Below, in pieces: positions 1,318-62,590 of a stretch of DNA of 64,000 nucleotides. Under the pieces are notes generated by a model. It had not been told where the DNA came from, ran no database searches, and worked only from the letters and a program-made list of their open reading frames with translations. Position numbers and translations under genes: made by a program. The stretch is from Haliotis rufescens. Taxonomy: Eukaryota. Location of the stretch: the NCBI RefSeq assembly GCF_023055435.1, contig NW_025963813.1, positions 38,440,001 through 38,504,000 on the forward strand, given 5' to 3'. How positions within the stretch are numbered: the first letter of the stretch is position 1; every line of letters begins with the position of its first letter.

Positions 1318-2654
1318 CCTTTTACCCCAGATGCATGAGTGACAGTCACATCTGGTCCTACGATGAGGCTGGACTTATACGACGTACCTTGGAGGACCCG
1401 CTTCAGCTGTGCAAAGTCATTGGCGAGTTGGGCGTCCGATAATGTGATGTTTGCGTTGTGATGAAACACATTTGGTTCTAGGCAAAACGCAGATACGTAC
1501 AAGCTAACAGTGGAAGCAGATGGACGTCGTCTTACTCGCCCTGGTGCTTTGGGTTCTTGATTATAGCTTCATCCTATTGTTGCAGTAGAGTTCGACAACA
1601 AACCAAATTTTGTATTGCTGTTCCAACTATGTACTGTCGCATGTGGCCGTTAATATATGACCCTGCGTAGTTCTTCATTGTGTACAGTCATGTACAGTAA
1701 CACTTTTTTTCATCAGTTTGTTATTGGGAGAAGGTTTACACGACCTTGTATAACAGTTCTCAGCATAAATATCATACAGAATGCATTGCCACTTATATAC
1801 TAGTAATTCTATAGGCATTGTGAAGTGAATGTTTCTAAAGATTTATAGTTGTTCCTTTCTTATTTATTGTAGATTGTGGGGGCACGGGTAGCCAAGTCGT
1901 CTAAGGCGCCGCGATTCGCTGTGCAGAGTTGCGTCCCTTGGGCACGCCAGAAACCTATGATTGTGGGTTCGAATCCCGGTTCGCCCCGATTATGTTACTA
2001 GGTTTGTCAGCACCATACCCGTGCTCGTGGGTTTCACCGAAGTGGTAAACGTCTGAGACCTGCATCACTTCGGGCTTTCCTCCCACATTAAACTGACACG
2101 CCGCGATATAACTGGAATACTGTTAAAAGCGGCGTTAAACCCAACTCACTCACTCATTATTATAGATTGTAAGGATTTGGATTAAGCTGTGTCTGACCAT
2201 TTTACTAACAATTGGTGAGTGAGTAAGTGTTTTGTTTGATTGATTAAGGCCGCACTCTGCAATAATCCAGTCGGCTGTAAATAATCAAGTCTGGACCGAA
2301 AAACCAGTGATTGACTTCATGAGCATCGATCTACGCAATTAGGATACGCTGACATGCATCTACTAAGTCAGCGAGCCACACCACCCGATCCCGTTAGTCG
2401 CCAATTCTAAACCATATCTTCACGGGTCGAGTTTGTACGCCGATTTTAGCAATATTCCATCAATATCACGGCGGGCTTCACACGTTGTGACCATGTCGCG
2501 AATCGAACCCGGGACTTCGGCTTGACGAGCGACAACGTTTTAACCACTAGACTATCCCACCGTCCCTACTGGGAAATAGCACAACGTGTCAGGTGAGGTG
2601 AAATGGGGTTTAACGTCGCGTCCAAGATAGTTGCACTTATATAGCGACGTGCAT

Positions 2655-2716
<62 letters not shown>

Positions 2717-5700
2717 CTGCTTGTACTAGTCCGGACTGATGCCGATTTATAGTGCTAGCTCACTGAGATACAATGCCGCAGATTAACATGAATACCCCAC
2801 TCAGACACAGTATACTGACTCCGAGCCGACCAGTCCTTGTTTTAGCCCCTTAATGCCGAGCGTCAGACAGGGTAACAACAAGTACCATCTTTTAACGTCT
2901 TTTGGTATGACGCGGTCGGGGATCGAATCCCGGACCTTCCGCTCTCCGGGCGGACGCTCTACCACTAGACCACGGAGGCGGTCTCCCAACGTGACAGACA
3001 TGCTGCTACTTCTGAAGACGTAACCTACCATTTCCCAGTTCGAATCCAGCAATATGGTAGCCTTTCTGTGACGAGTATTTAAGCAACAATTCAGCATTCG
3101 ATGGGTCCCATTTTCCTTGCTTCCGCAGTAAAATATTAAGGTCGAATATAAGCTTCACCCCCGTGTTATGAACAAACTTGTTAAGAATATCCCAGTCTTC
3201 AGCTGCAAGATGAAGTACAAATATCTGAAGGGATCAATGCATAAAGCGAGGACACAAAAATGTCATCAAAATACTCCTTGACTTGACTTCCATTAATTGT
3301 ACATTACATGCTCAGTACATAACCGGAACAGGTGACACAATGGCGCACGGTGATATCAAGTTTATTCTTCGCATTGAGACAGACTATTGTACCACAACTG
3401 TCTATGACTGGTTCTTATTTGTTGAGGTGAGGTGAGGTGAGATGAAATTGGGTTTAACGTCGCGTCCAATATTATTGCACTTACATAGCGACGTGCATGC
3501 ACGTGTGTGATGCTGATTTATAGTGCTAGCCCACTGAGATACCATGCCGCAGTTTAACGTGAATACCCGACTCAGACACAGTATACTGACTCCGAGCCGA
3601 CCAGTCCTTGTTTTAGCCCCTTAATGCCGAGCGCCAGACCGGGTAACAACAAGTACCATCTTTGAACGTCTTTTGGTATGACGCGGCCAGGGATCGAACC
3701 CCGGACCTTCCGCTCTCCGGGCGGACGCTCTACCACTAGACCACGGAGGCGGTCTCTTATTTGTTGAAGAGTCAAATCATCCAAGTTTATTGTATTCAGG
3801 CAGTGTACCGATATGATTATCAGATGTTGTTGACAAAATTGCTATAACATCGTGTCAAATGCACATATTGAAATCTAACCGACTTATCTATGGCATTGAC
3901 AGCGTTATATGTGTTTGAATGTCATTGCAAGCGTGAGTTTGCACTGCAGTCTGGATCGGTGTCCCTTTCCACAAGGCATTCGTAGCTTTACGATCGTAAC
4001 TATATAGTTTATCACAGTCTTACAAATGTCGTAGTGTTATTTCTTTAAAAAAATCACTTTGCATTTTTTGTCTTGACTATAAGTAATACTCCTTATTGGC
4101 TGAAGTTCTTGTTTCACGTTATAATTATTAGCACACATGCAGCTATCTTCGTCAACTACTCATTGCGATATTTCGTGATTCTATGTTCAGTGGCGAGGAC
4201 AATAAGGTATTTTACTACAGAGGACACAGGTAACAGAAATCGTCATGTCTCCTTCAATGATTAAGTATATTGTTAATGATACGAATAGTTATTTAAATCT
4301 TATAAAATACTAGGTCAAGCTATTAAATATGCCATCTTCAAGATACCCTAGAAAATGTTATAATATGATGCTTCTCTACGATAGCAATGGGAAGCAAAAT
4401 CGGGCAACAAAAGTCAAAAACATGTTATACGAAAGTGGATATGGTTATATTTGGTTACAGCAACATATAGATATGCCACAGCATTTCTTCCACCGTTTGA
4501 CACAGACCTTAAAATATATGTACATCCCAAAATGGCATGGTTCTTTGTCCAGTTCTAGAAAAGCAAATTACTACACTACATTTAAGACTACTATTATACT
4601 AGAACCTTATCTATTAAGTGTAAATTTCTCTTTCTCGATTTCGTTTTGGCCCACATGATCTATTTATTGAAACAGGCAGATATGAAGGTATTACAAGAGA
4701 ACATAGACTTTGTAGGATTTGTAAAACTGATTGTATTGAAGATGAATATCACTTTTTATATGTATGTCCAGTGTATAAAGATTTACGAGCAAAATATCTA
4801 AATAACTATTTCTACCGTAACCCAATCGGTAACAAATTTTGTAAATTAATGACTTGTGATTGTACAGAAACTATTAGAAATGCATCAATGTTCATTTATC
4901 ATGCTATGAAACTAAGAAAATGTATGAATTTGTAACACGCCCCAGACAATGTACTATAGGCCTTTGGCCTCATAAGTACCATGAATAAAGATTGATTGAT
5001 ACGAATCTTCTTACTCATTTCTTCAGGAACTTTTGAGGCCGACAATTCTTAAACAGCTACAGGTTACTCACCCAATAGTTTGAACGGCGATGCTGCGTTG
5101 GAGCTATGCTGTGTGGCATGGGGATCAAACACGACATGGTCAGCCGAGGTTCCCCCGACCCTCAGATATGAGGGAACGAGTTCTTTCACAAGCTTCTGGA
5201 GATTTGGTGAACTGTACAATGATACAGATGTAAATTATATCAGACGTGTTTGCTGAGAGGTAAAAGCTAGGAAAAATATACAGTCACCTAATCTTATCGT
5301 GTTTCATACCTGTGATGGGATCGAGTGGGTCAGACATGCTGACTTGATTGATACATGTAATTGTATCCACACTGTGCAGTCCGATGCTCATGATGTCAAT
5401 CACTGGATGTCTGGTCCAGACTCGGTTAATTACAGACCGTCGTCATATAGCTGGAAAATTGTTGTGTGGCGTTAAACAAAAACAAACAAACGAAAATTGA
5501 TGGAAAATTTGTTTTTAAAAAAGACAGAAAATAATCATAATGTTGTGAGTGAGTATGGTTTTACGCCGCTTTTAGACATATTCCAGCAAAAGCACGGCGG
5601 GAGACACCGTGAAATCGACTTCACACATTGCACCTGTGTAGGGAATCGAACCCGGGTCTTCAGCGTGACGAGCGAACGCTTTAACCACTAGGCTACTCGG

Positions 5701-6820
5701 CCGCCCCTAATTATAATGTAAGTAGTACAGAGGGACCTGAGAACACACACATAGGAATTAGGCCGTGGGCTAGGTAGAGTTGTGGTGAAAGCGGACCATC
5801 GTCACGCCGAAGACCCAGGTTCGATTCTCCACATTGGTTCAATGTGTGAAGCCCTGATATTGCTGTAATATTGCTGAAAGCCACGTCAAACCATACTCAC
5901 TCTCCTATCATGCTTGGTACTGTTTCGAAGGTCTGCCAATGATGACTTTTGTATAATGCGTTCATAGTATAACGTGCATGTGGCCCGAAGCACCCCTCAC
6001 TCAGTGATATTGATAAAGCAATCTTAAAAACAGTTTATTATACATATTTCTGATGATATGTTTAGAGGCCATGTTCGTCCCAATTCGCTGTACATAGTTG
6101 CCTCCCTTGGGTGCGCCATAAACTTGGATTCCAGGTGGGATCGGCTGTGATAATTTAATTCGTGTTCGTTTCTTTACTGGGGGCTAGGGTGGCCCATTCG
6201 TCTAAGGCGCCGCGATTCGCTGTGCAGAGTTGCGTCCCTTGGGCACGCCAGAAACCTATGATTGTGGGTTCGAATCCTGGTTCGCCCCGATTATGTTTCT
6301 AGGTTTGTCAGCACCATACCTGTGCTCGCGGGTTGCACCAAAGTGGTAAACGTCTGAGACCTGCATCGCTTCGGGCTTTCCTCCCACATTAAACTCACAC
6401 TCTGTTGTATCACTGAAATGCTGTAAATTGCGGCGTAAAATCAAACATACCCATTTACATATGATACATGTATTTATCTTAGCGACACAACTATGACCCT
6501 GGTCTCAATGACTGCCATGATCAACGATGTTTACAACAGTAAAGCAGATTGATTTTGGAAACAGAACCTATGCTTGTTTGTGAAAGTCACATAGGGTCAG
6601 CTATTTATAACGCGGGACATATATCTAACCTGAGATGGTGTCTTTCAAACCCTGCCCGCAAGATATAGCTGTCAATGGTCACTCCAACAAACATGTCGTC
6701 AACCTCCTGCACAACGTTGTCAGTAGAAACTGTCACATGTACTTGAAGTTGCTGCGATGCGGTGAACGTTGGTATCCATAGCAACACGAGGAACCGAATC
6801 GGACTAAACACCTGTACCAT
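1318..6820 (-). CDS. HPSE: Heparanase-like GH79 gene A, partial (exons 1-4; remainder presumably off the left edge)
   Basis: Exons 6630-6820 (signal peptide + FVGVTIDS), 5072-5211 (YLRVGGTSADHVVFDP), 3029-3202 (LIFDLN...WDPSNA...GFELGN), 1318-1477 (EPN...IVGPDV). All have GT-AG borders and splice in frame to give the catalytic GNEPN motif. The symbol means family similarity, not proven orthology. Confidence 0.88.
1879..2155 (+). mobile_element. tRNA-derived SINE family 2
   Basis: A-box/B-box head (GGTTCGAATCCC), (ACTC)n tail, TSD-like ttattRtagattgt. Further copies at about 6179-6450(+), 7148-7300(+), 30918-31190(+), 61650-61865(-). Confidence 0.85.
2592..2985 (-). mobile_element. tRNA-derived SINE family 3 with internal (CA)n
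   Basis: Head GACCGCCTCCGTGGTCTAGTGGTAGAGCG...GGATTCGATCCC and body CATACCAAAAGACGTTAAAAGATGGTAC (recalled as MetaSINE-like, unverified); TSD caacgtgWcag. Confidence 0.85.
2659..2715. repeat. (GT)n microsatellite inside a SINE
   Basis: Perfect GT run. Confidence 0.9.
3425..3754 (-). mobile_element. SINE family 3 copy
   Basis: Near-identical to 2592-2985, with 13-bp TSD TCTTATTTGTTGA. Other copies at about 29178-29302, 41170-41510, 42548-42842. Confidence 0.85.
4287..4996 (+). mobile_element. 5'-truncated CR1/L2-group LINE 3' end
   Basis: Frameshifted ORF2 C-terminus (IETGRYEGITREHRLCRICK...EDEYHFLYVCPVY), AATAAA plus (ATTG)n tail, 10-bp TSD TGATACGAAT (4277-4286, 4997-5006). Confidence 0.75.
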
Positions 6821-10249: not shown

Positions 10250-10500
10250 TTGTCGACACGGACACAATATGATTTAATATATGCACACAAGTTGTATCAA
10301 TGTCGACCCAAAACATTTGTATCAATGGCGACACAACACGATAAGCCTCAATGTCAACACAACACGATATTTATCAATGACGACAAAACACGATATGTTT
10401 TTTTGACGTTACAACAGAATATGTGTCAATGATGACACAACATAATGTGTAATTTTTTTTACACAACACGATATGCCTCAATACCGACACAACACAGTCT
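10250..10500. repeat. Degenerate tandem repeat of about 26 bp upstream of gene B
   Basis: Recurrent ATCAATGTCGACACAACACGATATG-like units. Confidence 0.6.
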
Positions 10501-10568: not shown

Positions 10569-13500
10569 ATGAAGGTAACACTGTCAGTGCTCCTCCTGGT
10601 CACAACCTTCATGTCCTCCACATCATCGGGAGCAGTGAATGTCAGTGTCACGGTGTCCACAACACAAGCAGTGTCATTTATTGATGAACTATTTGTGGGC
10701 GTCACACTTGACTCCAGTCTCCTGCCGACCCCACAACACTGGAAAGGATTGGACTTCAGGTAAGTCAGTGAAGGTCATTGCCATAGATGACAATAGATAT
10801 CAAGTTATTGAAGATTCCTTGATTTGAAATCCATCATTTGTATTCACACTTATAGCTGAGATTTGGACACATCATATTCCTAGTTTTATTCATGCACATA
10901 ATTGATATGAAACAGACATAATTGTTTTAATCGAGCTATTGTAGATTCCTTTCATTTGAAATTGATATTTTGTATTCTTGTATTTTGGTAACGGCATAGT
11001 TCAAACTAGCAAAGCAGATGTCTACAATAAAAATGATTTCCAAGCCGTTTATCACAGAAAAAAAATATAAATATATAATAAATGCATGATGCTACTTCTG
11101 TTGTTCGTTAATTTATTTAGATAAATAGTATTCTCTTTGGATAGGTAACCAAGGCATGCGGTATAGCACATATAAACCTGCTCAATTATTTATGACGTAT
11201 GTCCTGTATCACGCTATTGCTTTACCTCCAGCTCTCAAAAAGTTCAGGCACTGGCTAAAGGCTTGTCTCCATGCTATCTGAGGATTGGAGGAACTGAAGG
11301 TGACAGCCTGACCTTTGACCCTACCGGTAATGGCACAGTAGATGTCAATCGTTCATTTACAGGTGCGTACATCTACTAAAGATATATATAGTTTGTCTTG
11401 TTGTTGTATTGCGGATGGATAAACCTTTGATTTTATTGTCACTGAGGTAGGATAAGAGGTGGTTCAAATATTAGAGCATCAGATGTGTTTGGGTGCTGTT
11501 ACTACAGTTGTATCTGCAGGAGCTACCTGATGTGTTTGGGTGCTGTTACTACAGCTGTATCTGCAGGAGCTACCTGATATGTTTGGTGCTGTTACTACAG
11601 TTGTATCTGCAGGAGCTACCTGATGTGTTTGGGTGCTGTTACTACAGTTGTATCTGCAGGAGCTACCTGATGTGTTTGGGTGCTGTTACTACAGTTGTAT
11701 CTGCAGGAGCTACCTGATATATTTGGGTGCTGTTACTACAGTTGTATCTGCAGGAGCTACCTGATGTGTTTGGGTGCTGTTACTGCAGTTGTATCTGCAG
11801 GAGCTACCTGATGTGTTTGGGTGCTGTTACTACAGTTCTATCTACAGGAGCTACCTGGGATGCTGTAAATACATTTGCCCAGGATGTGAACTGGAACTTT
11901 ATATTCGGTCTGAACGCCCTGAAGAGGAAGGAGGGACAGTGGGATCCTACTAACGCAAAGGAACTGCTGCAATACAACAGTGCGAAGGGGTACCAGCTGG
12001 CAGGTTTTGAACTCGGAAACGGTATGTATATAACTAAATACACGGATATATATGATTGAATATAAATTCAATATACAACTAATAAAGAAATAAAATTAAA
12101 TGTGCCAAAACGTTTGAACATCTGATGACATTTCTTTCATGAATCTGAGAAATTACCTTTTGCCCCTTAATTTCATACACAGAAAAATCAAGGAAAATAT
12201 CGCAATTTTACAAGATTTATGACTTGCCAATAACATCTCGTGACATTAATTCAGAAGTGTAACTGGTTACAGAACCTGACTTATTCCCTGGGCAATATAA
12301 CATCACTGTCAGCGGCAGTCAGTTAGGTAAGGACTTCTATACCTTCAAGAAGCTGCTCCGATCGACACCAGGGTATGAGGTGACACCAGTTATCGGACCT
12401 GACATGGCCTCTATAACTGGAGCAAAATCACAGTTCTTTGCTGAGTAAGTAGACTGAACTGACAATGTTGTCAATGAATTTACCTAAGGGTCGTGGCCAT
12501 ACAGTTTGACAAAAGAGTAAACCTCAATTCTGGTCGCAAAACATAACCCCCGAACAAAAACAAATGCACCACCTGCACGTGGAACACGATGGTGGACCCA
12601 TTGTTACAGCACCCGATGGCAATTAGAAAGAAACACCAAGACAACCTAGTAGAAAACATAATACCTAAATAATTAATATATTATAATAAACTGATGCTTT
12701 TTGTAGCCACCCAGTCAATGTGATATATCAATTTGGAGAATTATGGATGTAGAATCGTAGTCCCTTTTGTTCTGAAATACGTATAGTACTGGTTTATCTC
12801 ACGTGGTTGCTGTAGAAATATCTGTTGTGCTGTGAAGAGACAAAACCTACCTTCGTATTCGTCAGTTTGTCACGTAGAGTTGGATCTATGGTTTGAAGTA
12901 ACATACATGCACAATCGCTGTTTGAAGACATAACAGATTACAGCAACTCACACAACAATGCCCACTTTGTTTCCTCAGTTTCTTCACAGGAGGGGGAGAC
13001 AAGGCCGTGGACAGGATAACTTTTCACCAGTAGGTTGTTTACTTTAGAATCTATGTATTGTTCTAGACTACTTAACCTGTACCGGTTTTTCATTAAGTGA
13101 ATGGTCAAATATTATGTTTGTTGTAATTAAAATGCTTTGTATAAAGTTCATGGAATACTGACACGTTGCCCAAGTCAAATCTAGGAAAGTCCACAAATGC
13201 AATATTACACAGGAAGTTTACTTTCTGCTCTAAAAAAGTCAACCATCTCTGTTTATCATCACATTAACTGATTGAATAACGTAAGCCATGCCACCAAGTA
13301 TATGTACATGTTTTACCTGTTTGTGACATTTCCTACCAACCAAAGAAGATGAACCATGGTCATCAAACCTATCGATGTTTCTAACAGATACTACACCAGT
13401 GGCGAAACGGCAAACCTCACAGATTTTACTGATTCCAAGTTAATGGATAACCTGGTCACTTATATAGAGACGGTGTTGGATGTGACAAGACGCACCAACC

Positions 13501-16337
13501 CACTTACCCCAGTCTGGTTGGGAGAAACATCCTCCTGTTATCATGGCGGTGCCCCGGGAATCTCAGACAGATATGCCGCTGGGTTTCTGTGCGTACAACT
13601 TTAGCATATACACTTCCTACCTTGGTCAACTATACACGCATACTGATAATGAATATTGGTTCATGTCGTCTATCTAGGGCTGAAATATTGTAGATATGAA
13701 GAGATGACACAAAGATAAGATTTGTCTTCGGATGTAAGGACGGTTGTGATGTAATAGAATAGACGTGTGTGTGTTTAGATGCAACATATACACCACCTGT
13801 TGAAAGTGTACCCTTTTCAGGTGGCTGGACAAGCTTGGTGTTGCTGCTCGGATGGGACTGAAGACAGTTCTCAGACAGGATTTCTACGCAGCAAGCTATG
13901 GACTTATTGACAATGATACGTTTGAGCCATTGCCTGTAAGTACAGAACCAACCAGATTTCTTATTTCTTTCTTGAATATACATTTACACGACGTCACATC
14001 TTCTGGACAGTTCTTTCCTCTTGGTGTCATTCCTTACTTTCAGTGATCACACTGCACACTCTGATTTTACCGTTTCCATGTTAACGGATCACCTGATCAG
14101 TTATATAGAGACAGCTATGGATGTGTCAAGACGTACCAGCCAACCTACCCTTTCTTGGGGAGACATCCTCCTGTTATGATGGAGGTACACTTGGAATATC
14201 AGACATATATGTAGCATCTATAAAAAACAATCACTGATTTTCAGTACTGCATGAATATAGATTCACCGTTATGTTGCCTTCAAGCCAAATGGAATCTATT
14301 TCGCTTTTAAAATCGAGACTGGTTATTCTCTAGCATTGGCGTTGTATAATTATGGTATGAGTGAATCACGACCATGTAATCTGACTGATAATTCTGCAAC
14401 AGGTTGTGACACAATTGGTCAAAGTGGGTTGAGTGTTATGCATTTATCTCATGGAATGAAATCATTAGCCACCTTCTAAGGATGATGAAGCCTAATTGCT
14501 GCTGGGGCGGTCGGGTAGCCTAGTGGTTAAAGCTTTCGCTCGTCACGCCGAAGACCCGGGTTCGATTTCCGACATGGGTACAATGTGTGAAGCCCATTCC
14601 TGGTGTCCCCCGCCGTGATATTGCTGGAATATTGCGGGGTAAAACCATATTCACTCACTCACTAATTGCTGCAAGATTGCTCATGCGGCTCGACGCAAGA
14701 ATCACTCACTCGATTGATGTTATCATGTTATGACCTTCTTGGACATATAGACGTCTATATTAGCAAACCATTATCTTCACTATCATCTGATGTATCGATG
14801 AAAAATAATCATTTTCTCAAGTTGAAAACATGACCAAATATGAGTGGAGAAAGAGAATAAAAATGACTGAGCTGAAATATTGAAAACATGTTACAATAAT
14901 CAATATTTCAGCTTAGTCAGTGTGATAAAGCCTTTCCTCTTCCAAGACGCACTCTTCTGTATATGTCACAACCTAAGTACCTTAAGAAAAAATGAACGTT
15001 TAACATAGCGAAATGTAGTTGCAGTGCATTTTTTTTTCTACATCGATATTAATGACAAATGATGAGTTAGTTTTATTCAATCTGTTTTTTTACTGCAGGA
15101 CTACTGGTTAACCGTCCTGTATAAGAGACTCGTGGGAGGCGCCGTGTTTTCAGTAGAGGCGACCGTGGACAACAGCACCATCAGGGCCTACGCCCACTGC
15201 ACAAAGCCTTCCATGTAACTTGACAACCAAAATTACAACTGTAACCAGACATCGTAATGCATCAGGCTGCAAACACGAACATTCATAATAACAAACTATC
15301 GAATGAGATAAAGGCTATGTGAGGTGAGATACCATAAAACAGGGTTTAACATAAGATTATTGCGGGTTACAGGGTAACAACAAGTGCCATCTTTTGACGT
15401 CTTCTGACATGACGCGGCCGGGGAACGGATGAAAAGGGCAACATTATTGATGACCATTGGTCCTCATTATCCTTTATTTGTAATTCACGTGGTAACATAG
15501 TTCTCCTTCCGTCCGCAATCACGAAATCAAATGAGTTCATTTACATGCAAAGTGAATTAGTCCGCTATTACTTCGTGTTGTGTTTTAGTTCCTATGGCTA
15601 CATGCCCGGCGGTGTGACGATGTATTTCCTGCTGACCACAGACAACAACACCTCCATAACGTTCCCACAGTTTCCCGACCAACCTGTAGACGTGTTCTGG
15701 TTGACGCCAGTCGATGGACTCACTAGCAGGTAAGACCCCAACCAACCTGTAGACGTGTTCTGGTTGACGCCAGTCGATGGACTCACTAGCAGGTAAGACC
15801 CCAACCAACCTGTAGACGTGTTCTGGTTGACGCCAGTCGATGGACTCACTAGCAGGTAAGATTCCCAGCGAAGGTATAGAAGTCGTCTAGTTCACACTTG
15901 TCCTTGGACTCACCAGACGTCCTCTGGTTCACACCAATCGATGTCACTAGTATGTAATTTCCCAAACTAACTTTTACACTAATATATGAATGAGTTGCAG
16001 GTTGTAAGAGTAAGTCGGTACTTTCTTCTTGAAAACCACAGAAAACCATTCGTGAAATTATCATATATGTATTGGTTTACTATAACATACACATGTGATA
16101 CATGAACGTTACAAACTATAATTGTTCACAAAGTAGCATGTCAGCTCATGTTCAGTTCTCTGTTTTTACCATGTTAGGAAGGTGGCCTTGAACAACAAGC
16201 AGCTTGACCTTGTCAATAATTCGCTGCCGGAGCTGAAACCTTACAGGACAGAAGAAAACACCATCACCTTCCCCGGGAAGTCATTCGGGTTCCTCGTCTT
16301 CCCTGAGGCTAACGTAGCCTCCTGCAGTAGCCAGTAA
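10569..16337 (+). CDS. HPSE: Heparanase-like GH79 gene B, complete, 10 exons, 483 aa
   Basis: Exons 10569-10759, 11232-11362, 11848-12021, 12273-12444, 12979-13029, 13388-13588, 13821-13935, 15099-15214, 15589-15729, 16178-16337 total 1452 nt and are open throughout. Motifs YLRIGGT, FELGNEPD, ITFHQYY, WLGETSS, WLDKLG, PDYW, YAHC; signal peptide; all introns GT-AG. Confidence 0.93.
11482..11856 (+). repeat. Minisatellite, 8 x 47 bp, made of the exon 3 splice acceptor of gene B
   Basis: Unit GATGTGTTTGGGTGCTGTTACTACAGTTGTATCTGCAG|GAGCTACCT. Confidence 0.92.
14062..14215 (+). pseudogene. Degenerate duplicate of gene B exon 6 inside intron 7
   Basis: Colinear with 13423-13580 (gattttac...ttatatagagac...acatcctcctgttatgatggaggt...atatcagaca), with a deletion across the PVWLGE region. 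Confidence 0.8.
14504..14661 (+). mobile_element. Short tRNA-derived SINE family 1
   Basis: GGGTAGCCTAGTGGTTAAAGC...GGGTTCGATT head, (ACTC)n tail, 11-bp TSD CTAATTGCTGC. Other copies at about 2430-2560(-), 5548-5708(-), 5765-5900(+), 50940-51025(+), 53570-53730(+), 63910-63965(-). Confidence 0.85.
15679..15861 (+). repeat. 3 x 63-bp tandem repeat of the exon 9 end plus donor of gene B
   Basis: GT donors at 15730, 15793, 15856; degenerate fourth copy near 15910-15958. Confidence 0.92.
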
Positions 16338-17360: not shown

Positions 17361-19177
17361 TATGTATGTATTTCTTCTTTGGATTGAGTATTGATTCTGT
17401 GATAAAAAGGTACATTCACTGACCATTTTACCCCCAAATAGTTTACATGTATCACTATTTACAAAACAGTATGTAATTACGTGCACTTGTCACCTGTGAG
17501 TACACTGTTAGATACATTTGGTGCCTGCATACTTTGGGTGAACGTTACACCATCTGCATCCGTGCCCCAAATGCGGAGTATGCAGGGAGAAAACGCTCGA
17601 GCAAGGGTCTTTAACTGTGTTGACCTGAATGTCAAAATGGAATCTGTAGAAGGAACAGGTCATCAATATCAACAATGACTGAAAGATTGTCACACTTACA
17701 CTACCCACCCTACCCCGCCACAACAATTCATTGTAAAGGTAAAATAAATCTAAGCTCATGCTACGTTTATCATAACGTCGGTCAGTTTGGTTTCACGCGT
17801 ATTTAATCAATATTTCAGTTATATCATGGCGTCTCAGCTTGACGTCAGAACCCACCATTATGTCATGCGGCGGCGGTCTGTAAATAATCGAGTCTGAACC
17901 AGACAATCCAGTGATTGATGTCATGAGCATCGACCCATGCAATTGGGATACCATGACATGCATCAACCAAGTCAGCGAGCCTGACCACCAATCCCGTTAG
18001 CCGCCTCTTACGACAAGCATAGTCGCCTTTTACGGCAAGCATGGGTTGCTGAAGACCTATTCTACCCAGGATCTTCCCGTCTATCGATGCAGTAGCAGGT
18101 ATAGCTATATCTAGTAATTTCAACGAACATAATTGGATACATTACCTATAGATCAGGGGGTTAAAACAGAGATATTGTAAATACGACCGTGTGCATAACA
18201 CATGCAATGATCACAGTGCATATATTAGGGTAATAATAAACAGTACTGAATGTAAATATTTAGCTGTGCTAGGCAATTCTCTGCCATGAGATAGATGCGT
18301 GATAATCGAAGTGTTGGCTACATGGGGCAGGCCCATGTTTCTAACGGGTGTACCAGAAACCATTGTAGAAAGCAAAACTTATAGCCAGATATCAATTCCT
18401 AACATCTGGCATTGATACCTTTGGACACTGTCACCCAGGACGTTAACCCGTGAAGATCCGGGTTAGAATAAGCCTTTAGCAACGACTGACCTCGTGTCAT
18501 TGACAAACTGCTGATAAACTGATAAAACAACTGGTTTACTTCAGTTCGATGATGGGATTTTTTTAATCAGAAATGAACTGCTCATGACGGATGCCACTAG
18601 TGGAGCAGGATACGCTGACCTTTTCGCATGACCCATGATAACCGGGGTAGAATAGGTCTTCAGCAACCCATGCCTGCCGTGAAAGGCGACTTTGCTTGCC
18701 GTAAGACTAACGGAATCGGGTGGTCAGGCTCACTGACTTGGTTGAAACATGTCATCGATCCCAATTGCATGGATCGATGTTCATAATGTCAATCACTGCA
18801 TTGTCTGGTCCAGACTCGATTATTTACAGACCGCCGTCATACAGCTGGAATACTGCTGAGTGCGGCGTTAAACAACAAACAAACCTAGGACGTAAGGTGT
18901 CATTCTCCAGGACCACTCTTCCTTGCATCCAATTCAAAGCGGACATTGTGTTGATGGGGCTGTGGCATTTATTGAAAGCGGATTCTGTATACTTTAAGTG
19001 TATGTGTTGTTTTTTAACATATGTGCCTTCAGTACTTGTCTAGTATTGTCTATTACTGTAATCATTATATATAAAATGTGCACGAGTGCGGAATGCTAAC
19101 TACAAAGGAAAATTTGAAAGATTTGTAATGTAACATTGGTTTAATGTAATCTACATTACAATTAATACCAGTCAGCA

Positions 19178-47700: not shown

Positions 47701-47784
47701 AGCAACAGTGACAGATACAGACTGACTCAGTGTAAATTGCACAAACCAGGAACACAGAATAACGAGCAAACGTCTCACATACAT
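41795..47784 (-). CDS. HPSE: Heparanase-like GH79 gene E, complete, with duplicated exon 8 (8a/8b)
   Basis: Exons 47600-47784, 47321-47451, 46633-46806, 46258-46429, 45959-46009, 45476-45676, 44581-44695, 8a 43202-43314 or 8b 42989-43101, 42322-42462, 41795-41948. GNEPA and WLGETSS. N-gap in intron 2. Confidence 0.9.
47161..47295. other. Assembly gap
   Basis: Run of N in gene E intron 2. Confidence 1.
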
Positions 47785-51272: not shown

Positions 51273-54200
51273 TCATTTGCAGATATCAACATCCGCATCA
51301 GGGAACACGGCAAACCCGAAGGTCCTTGCTGGTAGCATGAGGAGCCCGCCATAGGCCTTTTGAGGGGGCATGTCGGGGATGGTGTTGTTCACATAATCCA
51401 GTCGTTTACCATTTAGTGTCACATTCCTGAAATTACAACGTTAGTGTCTTAGATTCAATGCTTCCCTTGTACCAATAAGACTAAAGCGCCGATAACACAT
51501 CAGTCAGTTTGATGTTCGATAGAAATGTATGTGACATTACAGGTCACGTTTTAGTAGGTAGCACGTTATATTACGGCAAAGTCGTTGCATATATATATTA
51601 GCCTTTGTCATAAAGTATTAGTGTTCTGCTGCGCATTAGTCTCTACAGCATATGAATGATCATGTATCCCATACGTGCCTTGAAGTAAGGTCTATGAACT
51701 CTGGTCTGAGCCAGAAGAGATCCATATTCTTTTGGAATTGTGGGAAGGTGACGACGGTGGTGTAGATGTTGACGTTGATGATGTAGACTACAACACTTCC
51801 CGGCTTGTAGTTGTATACGCTATGTAAACATATGGGAAATTGTGAGACACAAGGATTAACATAGACACATCAGACCTCATTAAATTCCAGTACGTCACGG
51901 AAATGTGTGACCATAAAGCAGATATTTATGTTCTAGAAGTTGACGTTTAAAATATAAAAAGGAAGTAAGTAAAAATAAGAATGCTTGATAACGGTATTAG
52001 AACCTATGCCAAAACGTCGCTCTTCAATGTAATAAAGAAGTTGTTCATCCATAAATTCTTATCCTTACTAAGTACTACAACTTCTAAATGCCATTCAAAG
52101 AAGTAAAAATGAAGTGCTTAAACAGTATGTACTCGTCTCTGACTGTTCAATGTAACACATTCCAACTGTGTACCTGTTCTGTTTGGCACAGTGGGCGTAG
52201 ACCCTGAAACTGTTGCTTGAGTTGGTCTGCACAGATAACACGTTATTCCCAACAAGTCTCTTGTAGAGCAAAGTCAGCCAGTAGTCCTGGAATGTAGCAT
52301 TTGTCATACACAGGACATACATGTACATATACACACACATTTGATATAGATAAGAATGATTATGAACGAACATGTCTTGTATCAAATAAAAGCAACAAAA
52401 CCGTATTCATAAGAAATCTCTTCTAAAAGCAGAGTCGATTGCATGGTTCAAATTATATCCAATGTATCACTCACATGTATGCGCTTAAAGAGTAGGGATA
52501 TGACTCATATTGAAACTTTCACGAGTTCTTCACAGTTCGAATCAGAGACAGATACAGAATAAAAGAAACAGAAAAGATGAATTTTAGATCAAAAGATAAG
52601 ATTTTATTTGAACTTACCGGATAAGGTTCAAACGAGTTCATCTCGATGAGAGAATAATTTTTTCCATAGTATGATTGCCTCAAAACACCCTTAAGTCCCA
52701 TCCGTGAAGCAATCCCGAGCTTGTCTAACCATCTGAAATATCATGTCATTGAGATAGGCGTAGATCAAGGTAAGTCCATATACTGTAACAGGGTGGCGTT
52801 CATTTTACGTTCAGTAGACGACCCATGGCTTCGAGGTACGGTTTCACATTCATTCATTCCAGCAGGTTATACAACATATATGGTCATGTAGCCAGAGGCA
52901 TTATCCCTGCGACCTACACACTCCCAGACCAGCTTACACAAGACGAGACAATATAACTTCTCAACAGCTGACAAATGTCATCAGTATTTTTATGTTTATT
53001 TGCTGCTTCTGCTCCAGTTCCAGTATGGTCGTGAGATGCATGTGCCAAGTACATTCCTCTGTGGGATATGCTCGGCATAAGAACCCGATATGAATAAGGA
53101 TCAGGTGGTTACCATGCAGGGTCTGGCTGATTGTGTGGCATCATACCCTGATTGTCCATGAAGTCAAGACCCGTGAAGATCCGGGGTAGAATAGGTCTCC
53201 AACAACACATGCTTGCCGTAAAAGCCGACTGTGCTTGTCGTAAGAGGCGAATAACGGGATCGGGTGGTGAGGCTCGCTGACTTGGTTGATGCTGTCATCG
53301 ATCCCAAAAGCGCGGATCGATGCTCATGATATTAATCACTGGATTGTCAGGTCCAGACTCGATTATTTACAGACCACCGTCATATGGAATAGTGCTGAGT
53401 TCGGCGTTAAACAACCAACCTGCCAACCAACCCTGTTGTAAAGCTCTGGTTGGCCTGACTAGTTTATGTACAGTCCGCCTCACTATGCCTGGACTATATC
53501 TAACTGTCTCATAACAAAACATTCATCTATAACAAACGAGGCGATGGGGTAGACTCGTGGATAAAGCTCGCTGTAGACCCAGGTCTGATTCCACACATGG
53601 GTAAATTGCGTGTAGCCCCCAACACCACCCCCCCCCCCCCCCCCCCCAAACCACCCCTCCCCAAATCCCCCCCTCCCCCGTTATATGGGATAATGCTAAG
53701 AGAAGCGTAAAACCATACACAGTCACTCACTCATGCACGATACTCGTTATAAGTTAAAGAAAATAAAGTCAACCTTGAAAAGACAGGCAATACTCACAAG
53801 AACCCTGCGACATATCTGTCAGATACACCAGGAGTTCCCCCGCCATAGAATGTCGATGTCTCCCCAAGCCAAAGGGGCGTGTCGGGGTTGGAGGGGGTGG
53901 TGACGTTACGCACGGTTTCTATGTCAGATATCAGACTGTCCATCACCTTGGGGTCTGTACAGGCGTCCGGTGTACCAAAAGATTTGTAGGCGTAGTACCT
54001 GCACAGTAAATTGATTTCTGACCACAAAGTGTCTCCACTATACTGATTAAGAAACAGTCATATAAAAAAGTGAACTTAAAAGTAAGTAATTGAATAAACA
54101 TTATTGGATAGAGAATGATTCCAGTTCAAGACTCACTGGTGGAATGTTATCCTATCAACTGCTTTGCTTCCTTCCCCTTTGAAGAAACTGTAAAACAGTA

Positions 54201-56857
54201 AAAATAAATCCAAGAATCAGAGCCGTTTTATAATTGTTTTATACATTGGGTATTGTCAGTGACTCTTATTTTAGGAAATGAGATAGTGTCAGAGACACTT
54301 CAAAATATTGAAAATATCTGATTTAACATATTGCTGTAACAAAGCAATTGGGAACATTTATCTATGCTTATGAGGCATAATTGACAGTGATTCATAAACA
54401 CATGGTCATGATATAGTCGGAATCGTACACTCGAATCTGCTTTAGCGGAAATTTCTTATGAATTTTGAAGGGTTTTGTTGCATTTATTTACATTCAAATA
54501 ACAACGCTCTTGTTGCTGTTACCAATCTTGACATTTCTGTCACGTTCACTTCCACTTACTCTCGGAACACCAATGATTTCTTCCCTTTGATACCTGTAAC
54601 GTCTGGTCCAATCACCAAGGTGGATTCGAACCCAGTAGTAGACTTGAGTATTTCCCTAAGATGGGCAAAATCTCTCCCAAGCTGTGCTCCAGATATTGTA
54701 TCGGTGAAGGGTTCGGGAAAATATGAAGGTTCTAGAGACCAAACGAAGTAGAGTACAAAATTACGAATGTCATTTTTTCCCCATTGAACTACACAGTTTG
54801 AAATTTTCAACGTACAATTTAAGATTTGCAATGTACTCTTATGGCACGGGGATTAAACAAGGTATATTGTCACTTGGAGAAATAGAATGTGAAATAGATA
54901 GATGTTACGCTGTTCACTACCATTTCCGAGTTCAAATGCGGGTATCTTGTAGTTTCTGGCATTGCTATAGGTCATCAGTTCTTTGGCGTTGTCAGGGTCC
55001 CACTGTCCGTCTTTCCGCTTCAGCACGTTGAGGCCAAACACCAAGTCCCAACCCACAGTCTCCAGAAAGTTATTAAGTTTGTCCCATTCAGCACCTCAAA
55101 AATAATCAACCAAATGTACCATACAATACGTCCGTTCGTGGCATGATGAAGCCAAGGGATAGCTATGCCCGGATAAATATGCGAAGAGAAGAATTGCACG
55201 GCTACTTTCGGTGTTTACAAAAAAAACATGGCATCGCCCAATATATAAATTACAGTCCCAGAGAAGTCAAATCATTATGTAGGACAGTTGGAAAGACATC
55301 GCTTAACGTACGTACCACCACCAAGACCACGTAAGAACAGACTGCTAACGTGTTTGTAATCATTATCAAAATAATAGTCCACCAGTCTCTGAAAACATGT
55401 TAACTGCCAGTTGGCACCATCCGACAAACTAATCACTGGCTAAATGATGTAATATCGTATCAATGCACACATTCCAGGAACACTTGTTTTGGAACAGAGA
55501 TGAGAATACGCATTACGATGATAAATGTATGATGACATTATATGACGAACAGGTTAACACACTTGTGTGTACTAAGATATTACAAACTATGTACTTAGCT
55601 CGCCATCCCGTGATGATCCAGGTTAGGTCTTCAACCCATGCTTGCCATAAAAGGCGACTGTGCCTGTCTTAGAGGCAAATAAAGGGACCGGGTGGTCAGG
55701 CTCGCTGGCTTAGTGCATGTCATCTTACCCTGATGGCGTAGATTGATGCTCATGATGTCAGTCACTTGAATGTCTGGTTCAGACTCGATAATAATCGATT
55801 ATTAACAGAGTATATATAGCTGGAATATTGCCTTGTGCGGTTTTTAAACATAAATCAAACAAAGCACGCAAACGTTTGCTCAATACAATGTATATTCCCG
55901 AGACAAATATTACCTATCCCAGAACCCACTTGCGCGAAATTTATATCTATTTATCTTTCTAGTGTATTCATATGAGGAAATGCATTGCAGAATTAATGGC
56001 TGACATGTACATGTATGGGTTTGAACTTTGCAGTTGTCTGTACCTTATTGAAAGTGCCTGTGTTATTGTAACCACATTACTCCAACTTTCACAGGCGCTC
56101 TATTCCTTCAGGGAAAATAACACACTGTTTAAATGAAGGCAATAGGTTCGCTTTGAAATATTAAACGTCTTGAACCAATTCAACATTATTCAGTTATGAT
56201 TCTCGTGGTATTGAATACTTTCAAACCAGGAGTCACGTGTATGTCATGTAAACATACTAAGCTTTTCAATCAATTCTGTCATCGCAATTACCCCTGCCAG
56301 CTCAACCGTTATGAAATAATGACAGCTATGAACCAGTTCAACAATATTTAGTTTTGACTATCGTGGCATTGAATAAACTTCGATCATCACTGCCCAGAAT
56401 CATACCAGTATAAGTGGAGTCTGGACTTGTACCCCCATGACCCGTTGGGTCAAAGGTCATGAAGTCTCCAGGTGTTCCGCCTATCCTCAGGTAGCACGGA
56501 GACAATGCTTTCGCAAGCGTCTTCACTTTAGGTGAACTAGAAAAACAAGTCTTACAATAACAGGTATTCTCACAAACAAAAAAGAGTTGTTTTAGTTGAA
56601 ATTTAAAAGATTATTAATCATATTTATGTAAAATAGTGTTAAATGAAACTCATAAGGAAATGATACACTCACCCGAAATCGAGCCCCATCCAATTAATAG
56701 ATATTGGTAGCATTTGGGAATCAAATGTCACTCCAATGAAATGGTCATCTATCGTTGCTATTTCCTTGTCTGTAGCAACAGTAACAGAAACAGACTGACA
56801 CACTGTACATTGCACATGTAAGGAGCAGAGTATAACGAGCACACGTGTCACAGTCAT
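51273..56857 (-). CDS. HPSE: Heparanase-like GH79 gene F, complete, 10 exons, 478 aa
   Basis: Exons 56673-56857, 56406-56536, 54921-55094, 54560-54731, 54137-54187, 53798-53998, 52618-52732, 52174-52286, 51679-51819, 51273-51426. GNEPS and WLGETST; GC donor at intron 9. Confidence 0.92.
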
Positions 56858-60775: not shown

Positions 60776-61047
60776 CCTAATTAATGAAGTAACATTTAAA
60801 AATAGTCATGTCCACTGCTTACTTTCTTCATGTAAACGTGACGATGAATGCTCAATGCGCAGTCATGCAAATATCAATATCGTCTTCAGAAAAGGCATTA
60901 ACATTATTGCCTTTCAGAACTTTTAAGAGTCTTATTCAACCAGAAAAATATTTATCTACATTAACATCAAGAACCCTTCGACGTCCTTTTATTCAGTTGG
61001 ATTTTTACATCTCGTAGGAATGTAATTCTAACTTGAATGTCTTTCAG

Positions 61048-62590
61048 CTGGCGTTTTGAATGAAACAAGTTGTTTCTCTGTCCGTGCCAGTTGGGATCTC
61101 ATGTTTGGTCTGAATGGTCTTGAAAGACATGAAGGGCAATGGGATCCTACCAGTGCTGAGGTGTTCTTAGTCTACATCTCAAAGAAAGGATATCAGCAGT
61201 GTATGGCAATGAAAGGGTTGTTATCACCACTGTCAACTGAGTTTTGTTAATTTGTATGTTTATTTGTTTTTAATGCTGCACTCAGCAATATCCCAACTGT
61301 ATGACGGCGTCTGTAAATAATCGTCAGTCCAGTGACCTATATCAAGAGCATCGATCTACGCAACTTGGATCCGATGACAAGCATCAACAAAGTCAGCGAG
61401 CCTGATCTCACAGGTTCAACATAACAGTCACCGGCCAGGAGCTGAGTTTAGACTTTGAGTGACTGCAGAAGCTGCTTAGAGACCGTTCACACGTCAACAA
61501 CACTCTCATCCTTTTGCCTGATATCAACAGCATCACAGCCAACGACACACTCGCCTGTTTGGAACAGTAACGTAATTATGATTGTTCCTCACTGCCCATG
61601 TATGTAATATCTCGTGTTAGAGTATTTTCACCCTTTGTAATTGCAGAGAAGTGAATTTGGTTTAACACCCCTTTTAGCAGCATTCCAGTTATATCACGGC
61701 GTGTCAGCTTAATGTGGGAGGAAAGCCCGAAGTGATGCAGGTCTCAGACGTTTACCACTTCGGTGAAACCCCCGAGTACGGGTATGGTGCTGACAAACCT
61801 AGAAACAATCGGGGCGAACAGGGATTCGAACCATAGGTTTCTGGCGTGCCCAAGGGACGTGCCCCCATCTGAAACAGTCAAACTGAAACTAACCGGATCA
61901 GGGAGAAGGCGGCTGTGTAAAATGACAAGGTCAGTAACCGCCAGAGCAGCTGGGCCCTGTACTATAAGCAAGCAATGGTTATTATCATTCTTACATATTA
62001 CACGTGCACACATAATTATCATAGTTAATTGGCACTACTCGTTCATAATAAATATTACATGGCCTTATATTCCTATGGATAATAAAACTATAATTAATAA
62101 TAACATTATTGAATAACACACGCTTGACATTGCTGCACAAAAGCAAGGTAGCAACCTGTTTTGTGACACCATCTCATGTTCTTATTAAGAACAGGAATAG
62201 GCGGTCGGGTAGCCTAGTGGTTAAAGCGTTCGCTCGTCACGCCAAAGACCTTGGTTCGATTCCCGATATGGGTACAATGTGTGAAGCCCATTTCTGATGT
62301 CCCACGCCATGATATTGCTGGAATATTGCTAAAAGCGGCGTAAAACCATACTCACTCACTCACTCACTAGAACAGGAATAATCTTTCCAGTGGTACATTG
62401 TGTATAAAAGCAATTTGGATCCGTGCATGAACTGATAATAGTTGATATATGTAACTGTAGTTGCAGCTCGTTTCCAGGTGGCTTGATAAACTTGGAATCT
62501 CGGCCAGATATAGAATTAAAGGGTTGATGCGACAGGTGCTCCTCGAGGGCCCGAATAGGCTTATAATTATAAGCTCCTCATGGTCAACGA
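61048..62590 (+). pseudogene. Heparanase-like pseudogene G (remnants of exons 3, 4 and 7)
   Basis: 61048-61212: WDLMFGLNGL...GQWDPTSA...KGYQ with the FELGN motif destroyed. 61415-61566: FNITVTGQELSLDFE*LQKLLR...LPDI with in-frame TGA at 61460-61462 and the 5' end replaced by a SINE. From 62478: WLDKLGISARYRIKGLMRQ. Confidence 0.82.
62200..62368 (+). mobile_element. SINE family 1 copy
   Basis: Full copy with 12-bp TSD AGAACAGGAATA. Confidence 0.85.

What the first reader, a model, noticed from the sequence alone, without database searches (positions are those of the whole stretch)
1318..62590. Birth-and-death array of secreted heparanase-like (GH79) enzymes
Seen: at least 6 catalytically intact-looking paralogs (A partial, B-F complete) with signal peptides and near-identical exon sizes and phases, plus at least 4 relics, in 64 kb and in both orientations. 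Known: vertebrates have one active HPSE plus HPSE2, and GH79 enzymes are retaining beta-glucuronidases with an NEP acid/base and a GE nucleophile. Inference: this is a lineage-specific expanded secreted endo-glucuronidase battery, for example for digesting uronic-acid polysaccharides (algal food, mucus, biofilm) or for matrix remodelling.
Basis: partly seen in the sequence, partly recalled or inferred. Interest (0 to 1): 0.85.

Follow-up and report, generated by a model that had tools for sequence, protein, structure and literature searches.

The report
Red abalone heparanase-like gene array
This stretch of the red abalone genome holds six neighbouring copies of a heparanase-like sugar-cutting enzyme gene, part of a block of about 62 such genes; the genes are already in public annotation, but I found no paper on the expansion and their substrate is unknown.

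Summary
The window (Haliotis rufescens, a 41.2 Mb chromosome) holds six GH79 heparanase-like paralogs.

- **Genes B to F:** complete 10-exon genes of 478-483 aa with the same intron phases. My models of B, C and F equal RefSeq proteins exactly.
- **Gene A:** runs off the left edge and carries an internal duplication of exons 3-6.
- **Relics:** at least five exon relics and one duplicated exon are present.
- **Not haplotigs:** in-window dS is 0.22-0.48, dN/dS is 0.16-0.28, and individual paralogs have orthologs in other abalone species.
- **The gap:** it lies in intron 2 of gene E and touches no coding frame.
- **Wider context:** the window is part of a 2.2 Mb super-array of about 62 gene units in four higher-order repeats.

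All copies keep the NEP acid/base, the GE nucleophile and the residues that bind glucuronic acid. They lack the proheparanase linker and most heparan-sulfate-binding basic patches, and B to F are acidic. An off-array gene keeps those patches.

I read them as secreted single-chain β-glucuronidases that no longer act on heparan sulfate, most likely digestive. Limpets and periwinkles expanded the family independently. The scan had already noted a heparanase exon 21 kb beyond this window (s1-816420).

The parts
1..6820 (-). Gene A (A-type GH79), window part. Exon 1 is 6820-6630, exon 2 5211-5072, exon 3 3202-3029 (ends FELGN), exon 4 1477-1318, exon 5 about 341-291. Exon 6 (WLGETAS) crosses base 1. 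A tandem second set of exons 3-6 and exons 7-10 lie up to 10.4 kb left of the window.
   Evidence: tblastn with P0194 on the window plus L001/L002. The first 222 aa equal RefSeq XP_048250505.1, a 306-aa truncated model.
10569..16337 (+). Gene B, complete, 10 exons, 483 aa. NEP is split over exons 3 and 4 (12021|12273). The nucleophile exon 6 is 13388-13588.
   Evidence: Model, identical to XP_048250495.1 (P0293). Pfam PF03662 95.6 bits.
19178..26446 (-). Gene C, complete, 10 exons, 478 aa. Acid/base Glu164, nucleophile Glu284.
   Evidence: Identical to XP_046333821.2 (P0304). AF2 model pLDDT 92.8. Foldseek TM 0.90 to proheparanase 5LA4 and 0.88 to leech hyaluronidase 7EYO.
29626..34695 (-). 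Gene D, complete, 10 exons, 478 aa.
   Evidence: It differs from RefSeq P0281 only at 3 residues of exon 9.
41795..47784 (-). Gene E, complete, 10 exons, 478 aa, with exon 8 present twice.
   Evidence: It equals XP_048250508.1 (P0175) except for 3 residues that depend on which exon 8 copy is used.
42989..43314 (-). Tandem duplicate of exon 8 in gene E: 8a is 43314-43202 and 8b is 43101-42989. Each is 113 nt with a CAG acceptor and a GTACA donor, and they are 92% identical. Using both would shift the frame. RefSeq uses 8b.
47161..47295 (.). Assembly gap inside intron 2 of gene E; non-coding.
51273..56857 (-). Gene F, complete, 10 exons, 478 aa.
   Evidence: Identical to XP_048250510.1 (P0288).
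14060..14216 (+). Relic of exon 6 inside intron 7 of gene B, in two frames (frameshifted).
17492..17635 (-). Isolated relic of exon 2 of another subfamily (P0198 type, 85% aa).
18481..18884 (.). Copy of the 5' flank of gene C (26511-26922), 87.6% identical, with no gene attached.
38180..39888 (-). Decayed P0198-type gene: an exon-3 fragment at 38180-38257 in which FELGN has become FDLDN, and exon-1 fragments at 39665-39888 with a stop.
61038..62562 (+). Pseudogene G: an exon-3-like piece without ELGN (61038-61196), an exon-4-like piece with a stop (61412-61540) and an exon-7-like piece (62479-62562).

Best explanation
The window is a 64 kb piece of a very large tandem array of GH79 (heparanase-family) genes on a 41.2 Mb chromosome of the red abalone, Haliotis rufescens. 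Five genes (B to F) are intact. The sixth (A) is interrupted by an internal duplication of exons 3-6. Each gene encodes a protein of about 480 aa with a signal-peptide-like start, a (beta/alpha)8 barrel and a beta-sandwich domain. In gene C the acid/base is Glu164 in the NEP motif and the nucleophile is Glu284 in WLGETSS. By homology these are retaining beta-glucuronidases that work by double displacement. The residues that hold glucuronic acid in human heparanase are conserved. The roughly 48-residue proheparanase linker is absent, so no proteolytic activation should be needed. The basic patches that bind heparan sulfate are mostly gone, and B to F are acidic. I therefore read the array genes as neofunctionalised, secreted, single-chain beta-glucuronidases acting on non-sulfated or weakly sulfated glycans that contain glucuronic acid. 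Their most likely role is digestive, on algal, diatom or biofilm polysaccharides. An off-array paralog at 25.76 Mb probably keeps the ordinary heparanase role. Shown here: gene structure, integrity, family membership, fold, purifying selection and the array's architecture. Inferred: secretion, substrate class, endo- or exo-action, and tissue.
For: Identity and integrity: (PF03662 at 96-112 bits on proteins identical to the window genes). Homology: C against human proheparanase 303 bits, leech hyaluronoglucuronidase 7EYO 235 bits, bacterial exo-glucuronidase 41 bits. Fold: pLDDT 92.8, TM 0.90 and 0.88. Linker absent: query residues 95-100 align to chain residues 75-127 of 5LA4. Conserved glucuronic-acid site in C: D46, T83, N163, E164, H237, Y239, E284, Y289, G290-G291, Q324, Y331. 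Basic patches: K+R falls from 4 to 0-1 (HBD1) and from 2 to 0 (residues 226-235), and from 3 to 1-2 in HBD2 (except F, which has 4), while off-array P0196 keeps 3, 1 and 4. pI is 4.9-5.8 against 9.3 for mammalian HPSE. Selection: dN/dS 0.16-0.28. Array: 64 exon-3 hits, 63 of them paired with an open exon 6 in the right order, in four higher-order units. Copies of gene C in other units are 92-98% identical in a mosaic pattern. Independent expansions in Patella and Littorina. Only about 3 GH2 loci in the genome. Abalone entrails and Patella vulgata are commercial sources of high beta-glucuronidase activity (PMC2684592).
Against: RefSeq models do not tell me the tissue. Signal peptides were judged by eye and from low pLDDT, not with a predictor. 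A-type and P0204-type array members are basic (pI 8.9), so not all array genes fit the 'acidic, non-heparan-sulfate' picture. The role of the basic patches in human HPSE is recalled from the literature, not tested here. The dietary link rests on a few lineages taken from a list of the top 120 hits, not on a census. The commercial beta-glucuronidase activity could come from GH2 enzymes.
Confidence: 0.55

Rival explanations
1. The array enzymes act on the animal's own glycosaminoglycans or mucus, as heparanases, hyaluronidases or chondroitin-type endo-glucuronidases. They would serve matrix remodelling, immunity, mucus turnover or reproduction rather than digestion.
For: The closest solved relatives are human heparanase and leech hyaluronidase. 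A mollusc-wide survey found GH79 expression mainly in haemolymph, gill, eye and labial palp, not hepatopancreas, in species with 1-4 copies (PMC7560691). A-type and P0204-type members are basic.
Against: B to F have lost most heparan-sulfate-binding basic residues, while off-array P0196 keeps them. About 62 copies under purifying selection is unusual for a housekeeping matrix enzyme. The survey covered the few-copy genes of other molluscs, not this array.
Confidence: 0.22
2. They are exo-beta-glucuronidases that remove terminal glucuronic acid from small glucuronides or from oligosaccharide ends. On this view they are the molecular basis of the 'abalone entrails' beta-glucuronidase activity.
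For: Patella and Haliotis, the marine sources of the reagent (PMC2684592), both show GH79 expansions. GH2 loci are few, about 3. The -1 glucuronic-acid site is intact.
Against: Sequence similarity to the exo-acting bacterial GH79 is low (41 bits). With the linker absent, comparison with mature heparanase predicts an open cleft, which suggests endo-action. Nothing links the commercial activity to these proteins.
Confidence: 0.18
3. The genome-wide count is inflated. Some of the four higher-order units are haplotigs or assembly duplications, so the true array has about 17-35 genes.
For: Units share gene order and spacing. Proteins of matching genes are 96-99.6% identical. Parts of gene C are 98-99% identical between units. 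There is a gap inside the window.
Against: Identity between units is a mosaic of 92%, 94%, 96% and 98% segments with indels, and the units differ in gene content (13-17 genes) and in some spacings. Two haplotypes cannot give four units. Black abalone has its copies on a 2.25 Mb contig, and H. asinina has at least 16 clusters below 90% identity on one chromosome.
Confidence: 0.2

Closest known systems
Human heparanase HPSE (GH79, EC 3.2.1.166; PDB 5E8M, proenzyme 5LA4)
   Same: It is the best sequence and fold match (303 bits, 35-40% identity, TM 0.90). It has the same NEP acid/base, GE nucleophile and glucuronic-acid-binding residues, and the same two-domain architecture.
   Different: The window genes lack the 48-residue linker, so no 8 kDa + 50 kDa heterodimer and no cathepsin activation step is expected. 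Most basic heparan-sulfate-binding residues are lost. pI is about 5-6 against 9.3.
Leech hyaluronoglucuronidase LHyal (GH79, EC 3.2.1.36; PDB 7EYO), and the five-member hya family of leeches (PMC13368403)
   Same: It is a single-chain lophotrochozoan GH79 of about 490 aa without a long linker. TM is 0.88 at rmsd 2.6 A. It also belongs to a multigene family that its authors link to feeding strategy and describe by birth-and-death.
   Different: Sequence similarity is lower than to HPSE (235 against 303 bits). Leeches have 5 members against about 62 loci here. Hyaluronan specificity is not shown for the abalone genes. I did not place the leech protein in the tree.
Bacterial exo-beta-glucuronidase AcGlcA79A (GH79; PDB 3VNY)
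   Same: Same family and fold (TM 0.73-0.76).
   Different: Only about 19% identity and 41 bits, so it gives no basis for inferring exo-action.
Off-array abalone GH79 genes (P0196 at C35:25.75-25.77 Mb; the 'hyaluronoglucuronidase-like' P0195)
   Same: Same genome, same chromosome, same family.
   Different: P0196 groups with the deep-sea snail Gigantopelta rather than with the array clades. It keeps a partial linker and the basic patches, so it is the likely ordinary heparanase.
Expanded digestive glycoside hydrolase families of molluscs (GH9, GH10, GH18, GH20; PMC7560691)
   Same: Lineage-specific expansions of hydrolase families that the authors discuss in relation to algal feeding.
   Different: That survey scored GH79 at 1-4 copies, did not list it as expanded, and its main text cites Haliotis only in the reference list.

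Membership tests
Glycoside hydrolase family 79 | Match to Pfam PF03662 (Glyco_hydro_79n) above the curated cut-off | tested here: met
   95.6-111.8 bits against a cut-off of 23.1 for proteins identical to genes B and C and for an A-type protein. Exon 3 alone scores 43.5 bits.
Glycoside hydrolase family 79 | Catalytic acid/base Glu in an NEP motif and nucleophile Glu in a GE(T/S) motif | tested here: met
   FELGNEP and WLGET(S/A) are present in A to F. Both Glu are invariant in a 49-sequence alignment.
Glycoside hydrolase family 79 | (beta/alpha)8 barrel plus a C-terminal beta-sandwich fold | tested here: met
   AF2 model of gene C's protein has pLDDT 92.8 and pTM 0.91. The top 33 Foldseek hits are all GH79 structures.
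Glycoside hydrolase family 79 | Retaining beta-glucuronidase activity | not testable with these tools
   Needs an enzyme assay.
Heparanase in the strict sense (EC 3.2.1.166) | Proenzyme with an excisable linker that yields 8 kDa and 50 kDa subunits | tested here: not met
   4 residues in gene C stand where 51 lie in 5LA4. Exon 2 joins exon 3 directly and no extra exon lies in intron 2.
Heparanase in the strict sense (EC 3.2.1.166) | Basic heparan-sulfate-binding clusters (HBD1 158-171, loop 226-235, HBD2 270-280) | tested here: not met
   K+R counts are 0-1, 0 and 1-2 in B to E (F has 4 in HBD2), against 4, 2 and 3 in mammalian HPSE. pI is 4.9-5.8. The functional meaning of these clusters is taken from the literature as I recall it.
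Heparanase in the strict sense (EC 3.2.1.166) | Cleavage of heparan sulfate | not testable with these tools
   Needs an assay.
Hyaluronoglucuronidase (EC 3.2.1.36, leech type) | Closer kinship to LHyal than to heparanase | tested here: not met
   235 bits to 7EYO against 303 bits to 5LA4. The leech protein was not placed in the tree.
Hyaluronoglucuronidase (EC 3.2.1.36, leech type) | Single chain of about 480-490 aa without a linker | tested here: met
   TMt 0.87 over a 486-residue chain.
Birth-and-death multigene array | Tandem paralogs of mixed ages, with pseudogenes and with orthologs of single paralogs in other species | tested here: met
   dS 0.22-0.48 between C to F and 40-55% aa identity to the A and B types. 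Relics and a truncated gene. C, B, D and E each pair with an H. cracherodii protein, and F with an H. asinina protein.

The most novel reading that the evidence does not exclude
Grazing gastropods (abalone, limpets, periwinkles) independently multiplied linker-less GH79 enzymes into large arrays as a digestive battery for glucuronic-acid-rich algal, diatom and biofilm glycans. These arrays, rather than GH2 enzymes, would then be the so far unassigned source of the very high beta-glucuronidase activity for which abalone entrails and Patella vulgata have long been sold as laboratory reagents.
Probability: 0.3. Interest if true: 0.7.

Novelty: new member of a known kind. Interest (0 to 1): 0.5.

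Why it matters
The array also offers a natural series: about 17 paralog types, an ordinary heparanase-like gene on the same chromosome, and orthologs in several abalone species. With it one could study how a matrix-remodelling enzyme that needs activation is turned into a constitutively open, acidic, multi-copy secreted hydrolase. It also gives candidate genes for two practical questions. One is which proteins make up the mollusc beta-glucuronidase reagents. The other is which enzymes let farmed abalone use uronic-acid-rich feed. On the other side, the genes are already annotated in RefSeq and belong to a well-known family, and function and expression are untested. The interest lies in the evolutionary pattern and in the hypotheses it opens, not in a new mechanism.

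Tried and rejected
- **Pfam on single exons:** only exon 3 passes clearly and exon 6 is weak (E=0.0038). The other exons give nothing, so exon families were defined by self-comparison instead.
- **Splice-site scoring alone:** it mis-picked several junctions. The GC donor of intron 9 and the tGAG acceptor of intron 2 in C to F were recovered only by scoring junction peptides against fetched homologs.
- **Joined models:** I did not send joined (spliced) models to any search, fold or look-up tool. They were built and compared only in the sandbox. RefSeq proteins returned by the tools and found identical to the models (P0293, P0304, P0288) stood in for them.
- **Haplotig explanation for the in-window copies:** rejected (dS 0.22-0.48; orthologs in other species).
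- **Gene conversion at the 3' exons:** considered as the reason why exons 8-10 are 93-98% identical. Introns there are only 78-80% identical, so constraint explains most of it. Lower 3' dS (0.14-0.31 against 0.24-0.59) leaves some conversion possible.
- **Other genes in the window:** seven long intergenic or intronic ORFs have no Pfam match.
- **Literature:** searches for heparanase or GH79 in abalone, digestive gland, or the identity of abalone beta-glucuronidase found nothing on this array.
- **Leech hyaluronidase in the tree:** I compared it by PDB sequence and fold search instead.
- **Endo- or exo-action:** could not be decided from the model with these tools.


Full report
**What is in the window**

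Self-comparison of all stop-free segments showed exon-sized peptide families recurring five to seven times at roughly 10 kb spacing. A six-frame scan of the whole genome with Pfam PF03662 (GH79 N-terminal domain) hit six places in the window. All six are the exon that ends in FELGN, just before the catalytic Glu. That exon from gene B matches Pfam at E=2.8e-11 and human heparanase at E=5e-8.

I built spliced models in the sandbox. For each intron I scored candidate donor and acceptor pairs against full-length mollusc homologs fetched by the tools.

- **Genes B to F:** each has ten exons and an open frame. B (+, 10569-16337) encodes 483 aa. C (-, 26446-19178), D (-, 34695-29626), E (-, 47784-41795) and F (-, 56857-51273) each encode 478 aa.
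- **Exon sizes:** they are identical in C to F (185/131/174/172/51/201/115/113/141/154 nt), and B differs in three exons.
- **Intron phases:** 2,1,1,2,2,2,0,2,2 in every copy.
- **Unusual splice sites:** C to F share a GC donor in intron 9 and a tGAG acceptor in intron 2.

The joined models were not sent to any search or fold tool. They were compared locally with proteins that the tools returned.

- B, C and F are identical over their full length to RefSeq XP_048250495.1, XP_046333821.2 and XP_048250510.1.
- E differs from XP_048250508.1 at three residues that depend only on which exon 8 copy is used.
- D differs from a RefSeq isoform only at three residues of exon 9.

**The organism**

The window's contig is 41,214,950 bp. 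That is exactly the contig length recorded for the Haliotis rufescens RefSeq proteins. With the exact protein matches, this shows the genome is red abalone.

**Gene A and the relics**

Gene A (-) has exons 1-5 in the window, and exon 6 crosses base 1. The flank fetched from the genome shows a second tandem set of exons 3-6, followed by exons 7-10 up to 10.4 kb to the left. Using both sets would break the frame. RefSeq's model for this copy stops at 306 aa, whereas A-type copies elsewhere in the array give 488 aa. A is thus partial in the window and possibly impaired.

Relics:

- A frameshifted exon-6 piece in B's intron 7 (14060-14216).
- A lone exon 2 of another subfamily (17492-17635).
- A decayed gene of that same subfamily (38180-38257 and 39665-39888, with a stop and FELGN changed to FDLDN).
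- A pseudogene at 61038-62562 (+).
- A gene-less copy of C's 5' flank (18481-18884).
- Two copies of exon 8 in gene E (43314-43202 and 43101-42989), both with good splice sites.

No other protein-coding gene was detected in the window.

**The gap**

The Ns at 47161-47295 lie in intron 2 of gene E. They begin 25 nt after the exon-2 donor (47320), and exon 3 starts at 46806. The DNA on each side aligns, in order and orientation, to intron 2 of paralogs F and C within the window. The matching distance in F is about 180 bp. No reading frame crosses the gap.

**Not haplotigs, and under selection**

Between C, D, E and F, dS is 0.22-0.48 and dN/dS is 0.16-0.28. A and B are only 40-55% identical in protein to C-F.

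In a maximum-likelihood tree of 71 proteins:

- C and B each pair with an H. cracherodii protein at 98.7% and 96.3% identity.
- D and E pair with their near-identical H. rufescens proteins in the tree. Their H. cracherodii counterparts (not in the tree) are 94% and 98% identical by direct comparison.
- F pairs with an H. asinina protein.

Several duplications therefore predate abalone speciation, while others are recent. This is a birth-and-death pattern.

**Genome context**

The exon-3 scan gave 68 hits. A profile of the nucleophile exon gave 75 hits, 67 of them near full length and open. In C35:38.18-40.41 Mb, 63 of 64 exon-3 hits pair with an exon-6 hit on the same strand at the right distance. 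One of these pairs is A's internal duplicate, so there are about 62 gene units.

These units form four higher-order units of 13-17 genes with the same order and similar spacing. The window is the A-F block of the first unit. Copies of gene C in the other units are 92-98% identical, in a mosaic of segments with indels, and proteins of matching genes are 96-99.6% identical. I judge the units to be real segmental duplications, but read depth could not be checked.

About five further GH79 loci lie elsewhere. They include P0196 at C35:25.75-25.77 Mb, which groups with a deep-sea vetigastropod protein rather than with the array clades. Some copies in other units carry changes next to catalytic residues: NEP to SEP in XP_048250576.1, and WLGETSS to WLWETSS in XP_048250525.1.

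**What the proteins are**

Proteins identical to B and C, and an A-type protein, match PF03662 at 96-112 bits. Gene C's protein scores as follows against solved structures:

| Solved structure | Bits |
|---|---|
| Human proheparanase 5LA4 | 303 |
| Leech hyaluronoglucuronidase 7EYO | 235 |
| Burkholderia heparanase | 61 |
| Acidobacterium exo-beta-glucuronidase | 41 |

An AlphaFold2 model built on 49 homologs is confident (pLDDT 92.8, pTM 0.91). It superposes on 5LA4 (TM 0.90), on 7EYO (TM 0.88, rmsd 2.6 A) and on the mature 50 kDa subunit (target-normalised TM 0.93-0.94).

The acid/base (Glu164) and the nucleophile (Glu284) are conserved. So are the counterparts of heparanase D62, T97, N224, H296, Y298, Y348, G349-G350, Q383 and Y391. 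That these residues form the -1 glucuronic-acid site is from my recollection of the heparanase structure papers.

Two things differ from heparanase:

- **The linker is missing.** Residues 95-100 of gene C stand where chain residues 75-127 of 5LA4 lie. These should therefore be single-chain enzymes that need no proteolytic activation.
- **The basic patches are largely gone.** K+R counts fall from 4, 2 and 3 in the three heparan-sulfate-binding stretches of mammalian HPSE to 0-1, 0 and 1-2 in B to E (F keeps 4 in the third). Off-array P0196 keeps 3, 1 and 4. Predicted mature pI is 4.9-5.8 for B to F against 9.3 for mammalian HPSE, although A-type and P0204-type array members are basic at 8.9.

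**How it most likely works**

Shown here: these are intact GH79 genes under purifying selection, in a very large array.

Inferred: they are secreted retaining beta-glucuronidases, active without processing, that have moved away from heparan sulfate toward non-sulfated or weakly sulfated substrates containing glucuronic acid.

I favour a digestive role, for three reasons:

- The family expanded independently in Patellogastropoda (an 8-protein clade, support 96) and in Littorina (a 5-protein clade, support 100), as well as in Haliotis.
- A survey of seven other molluscs found only 1-4 GH79 genes (PMC7560691).
- Haliotis entrails and Patella vulgata are the marine sources of commercial beta-glucuronidase (PMC2684592), while the genome has only about three GH2 loci.

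None of this is direct evidence. The rivals remain open: endogenous matrix or mucus remodelling, exo-acting deconjugation, and partial inflation of the count by assembly.

**Comparison with what is known, and novelty**

The genes are members of GH79 by every feature I could test. They do not meet two tested defining features of heparanase in the strict sense (linker and basic clusters). They are less similar to the leech hyaluronidase than to heparanase. Leeches have a five-member GH79 family that its authors link to feeding strategy (PMC13368403), so the abalone array is a much larger case of a similar kind.

Because the genes are in RefSeq and the family is well known, I class this as a new member of a known kind. 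What seems undescribed is the scale, the higher-order repeat architecture, the parallel expansions in other grazing gastropods, and the charge and linker changes that separate array genes from the off-array gene.

**Earlier scan notes**

Notes on this window already recorded the missing linker (s1-810291) and the duplicated exon 8 (s1-810365). I found both independently before reading those notes, and I confirm them. A note 21 kb beyond the window (s1-816420) concerns a neighbouring gene of the same array.

Noticed in passing
window 1-3209 and L001:5620-8205 (genome C35:38435620-38443209): Gene A carries a tandem internal duplication of exons 3-6, about 4.2 kb long. The second exon-6 copy encodes the same peptide as the first, and exon 3' is 95% identical to A-type P0194 (98% for the first exon 3). 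Using both sets would shift the frame. RefSeq's model for this copy ends after the first exon 6 at 306 aa.
   Followed up: partly
window 42989-43314: Exon 8 of gene E is present twice, 213 bp apart, and both copies have intact splice sites. They would have to be mutually exclusive. RefSeq uses the downstream copy.
   Followed up: partly
window 19654, 29979, 42321, 51678 (donors); 22727, 32983, 46806, 55094 (acceptors): Genes C to F share a GC-AG intron 9 (AAG|GCAAGT type) and a weak tGAG acceptor at intron 2. B and A use standard GT donors and CAG acceptors at these sites.
   Followed up: no
window 25672-26180 (intron 1 of gene C): An interspersed repeat of about 510 bp, with at least 40 copies at 79-87% identity on many contigs of the genome. 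It is probably a SINE or MITE-like element.
   Followed up: no
window 11446-11808 (intron 2 of gene B): A short tandem repeat gives overlapping open segments in several frames just upstream of exon 3. An earlier scan note (s1-810391) reads it as amplified decoy splice acceptors.
   Followed up: no
other units of the array (RefSeq XP_048250576.1 = P0284; XP_048250525.1 = P0176): Some higher-order copies have substitutions beside the catalytic residues: FELGSEP instead of FELGNEP, and WLWETSS instead of WLGETSS. These are signs of decay among recent duplicates.
   Followed up: no
window 6820-10569: Genes A and B are head to head and share a 3.7 kb intergenic region. B and C are tail to tail, and that spacer holds two relics.
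   Followed up: no
G000:C57:24.35, 24.39 and 28.39 Mb: Only three loci in the genome match the GH2 catalytic domain (the family of classical beta-glucuronidase GUSB), against more than 60 GH79 loci.
   Followed up: partly
RefSeq P0281 against window gene D: A RefSeq isoform of D carries three exon-9 residues that match gene C's exon 9. It is either a read-through or chimeric model, or it comes from a D copy in another unit.
   Followed up: no
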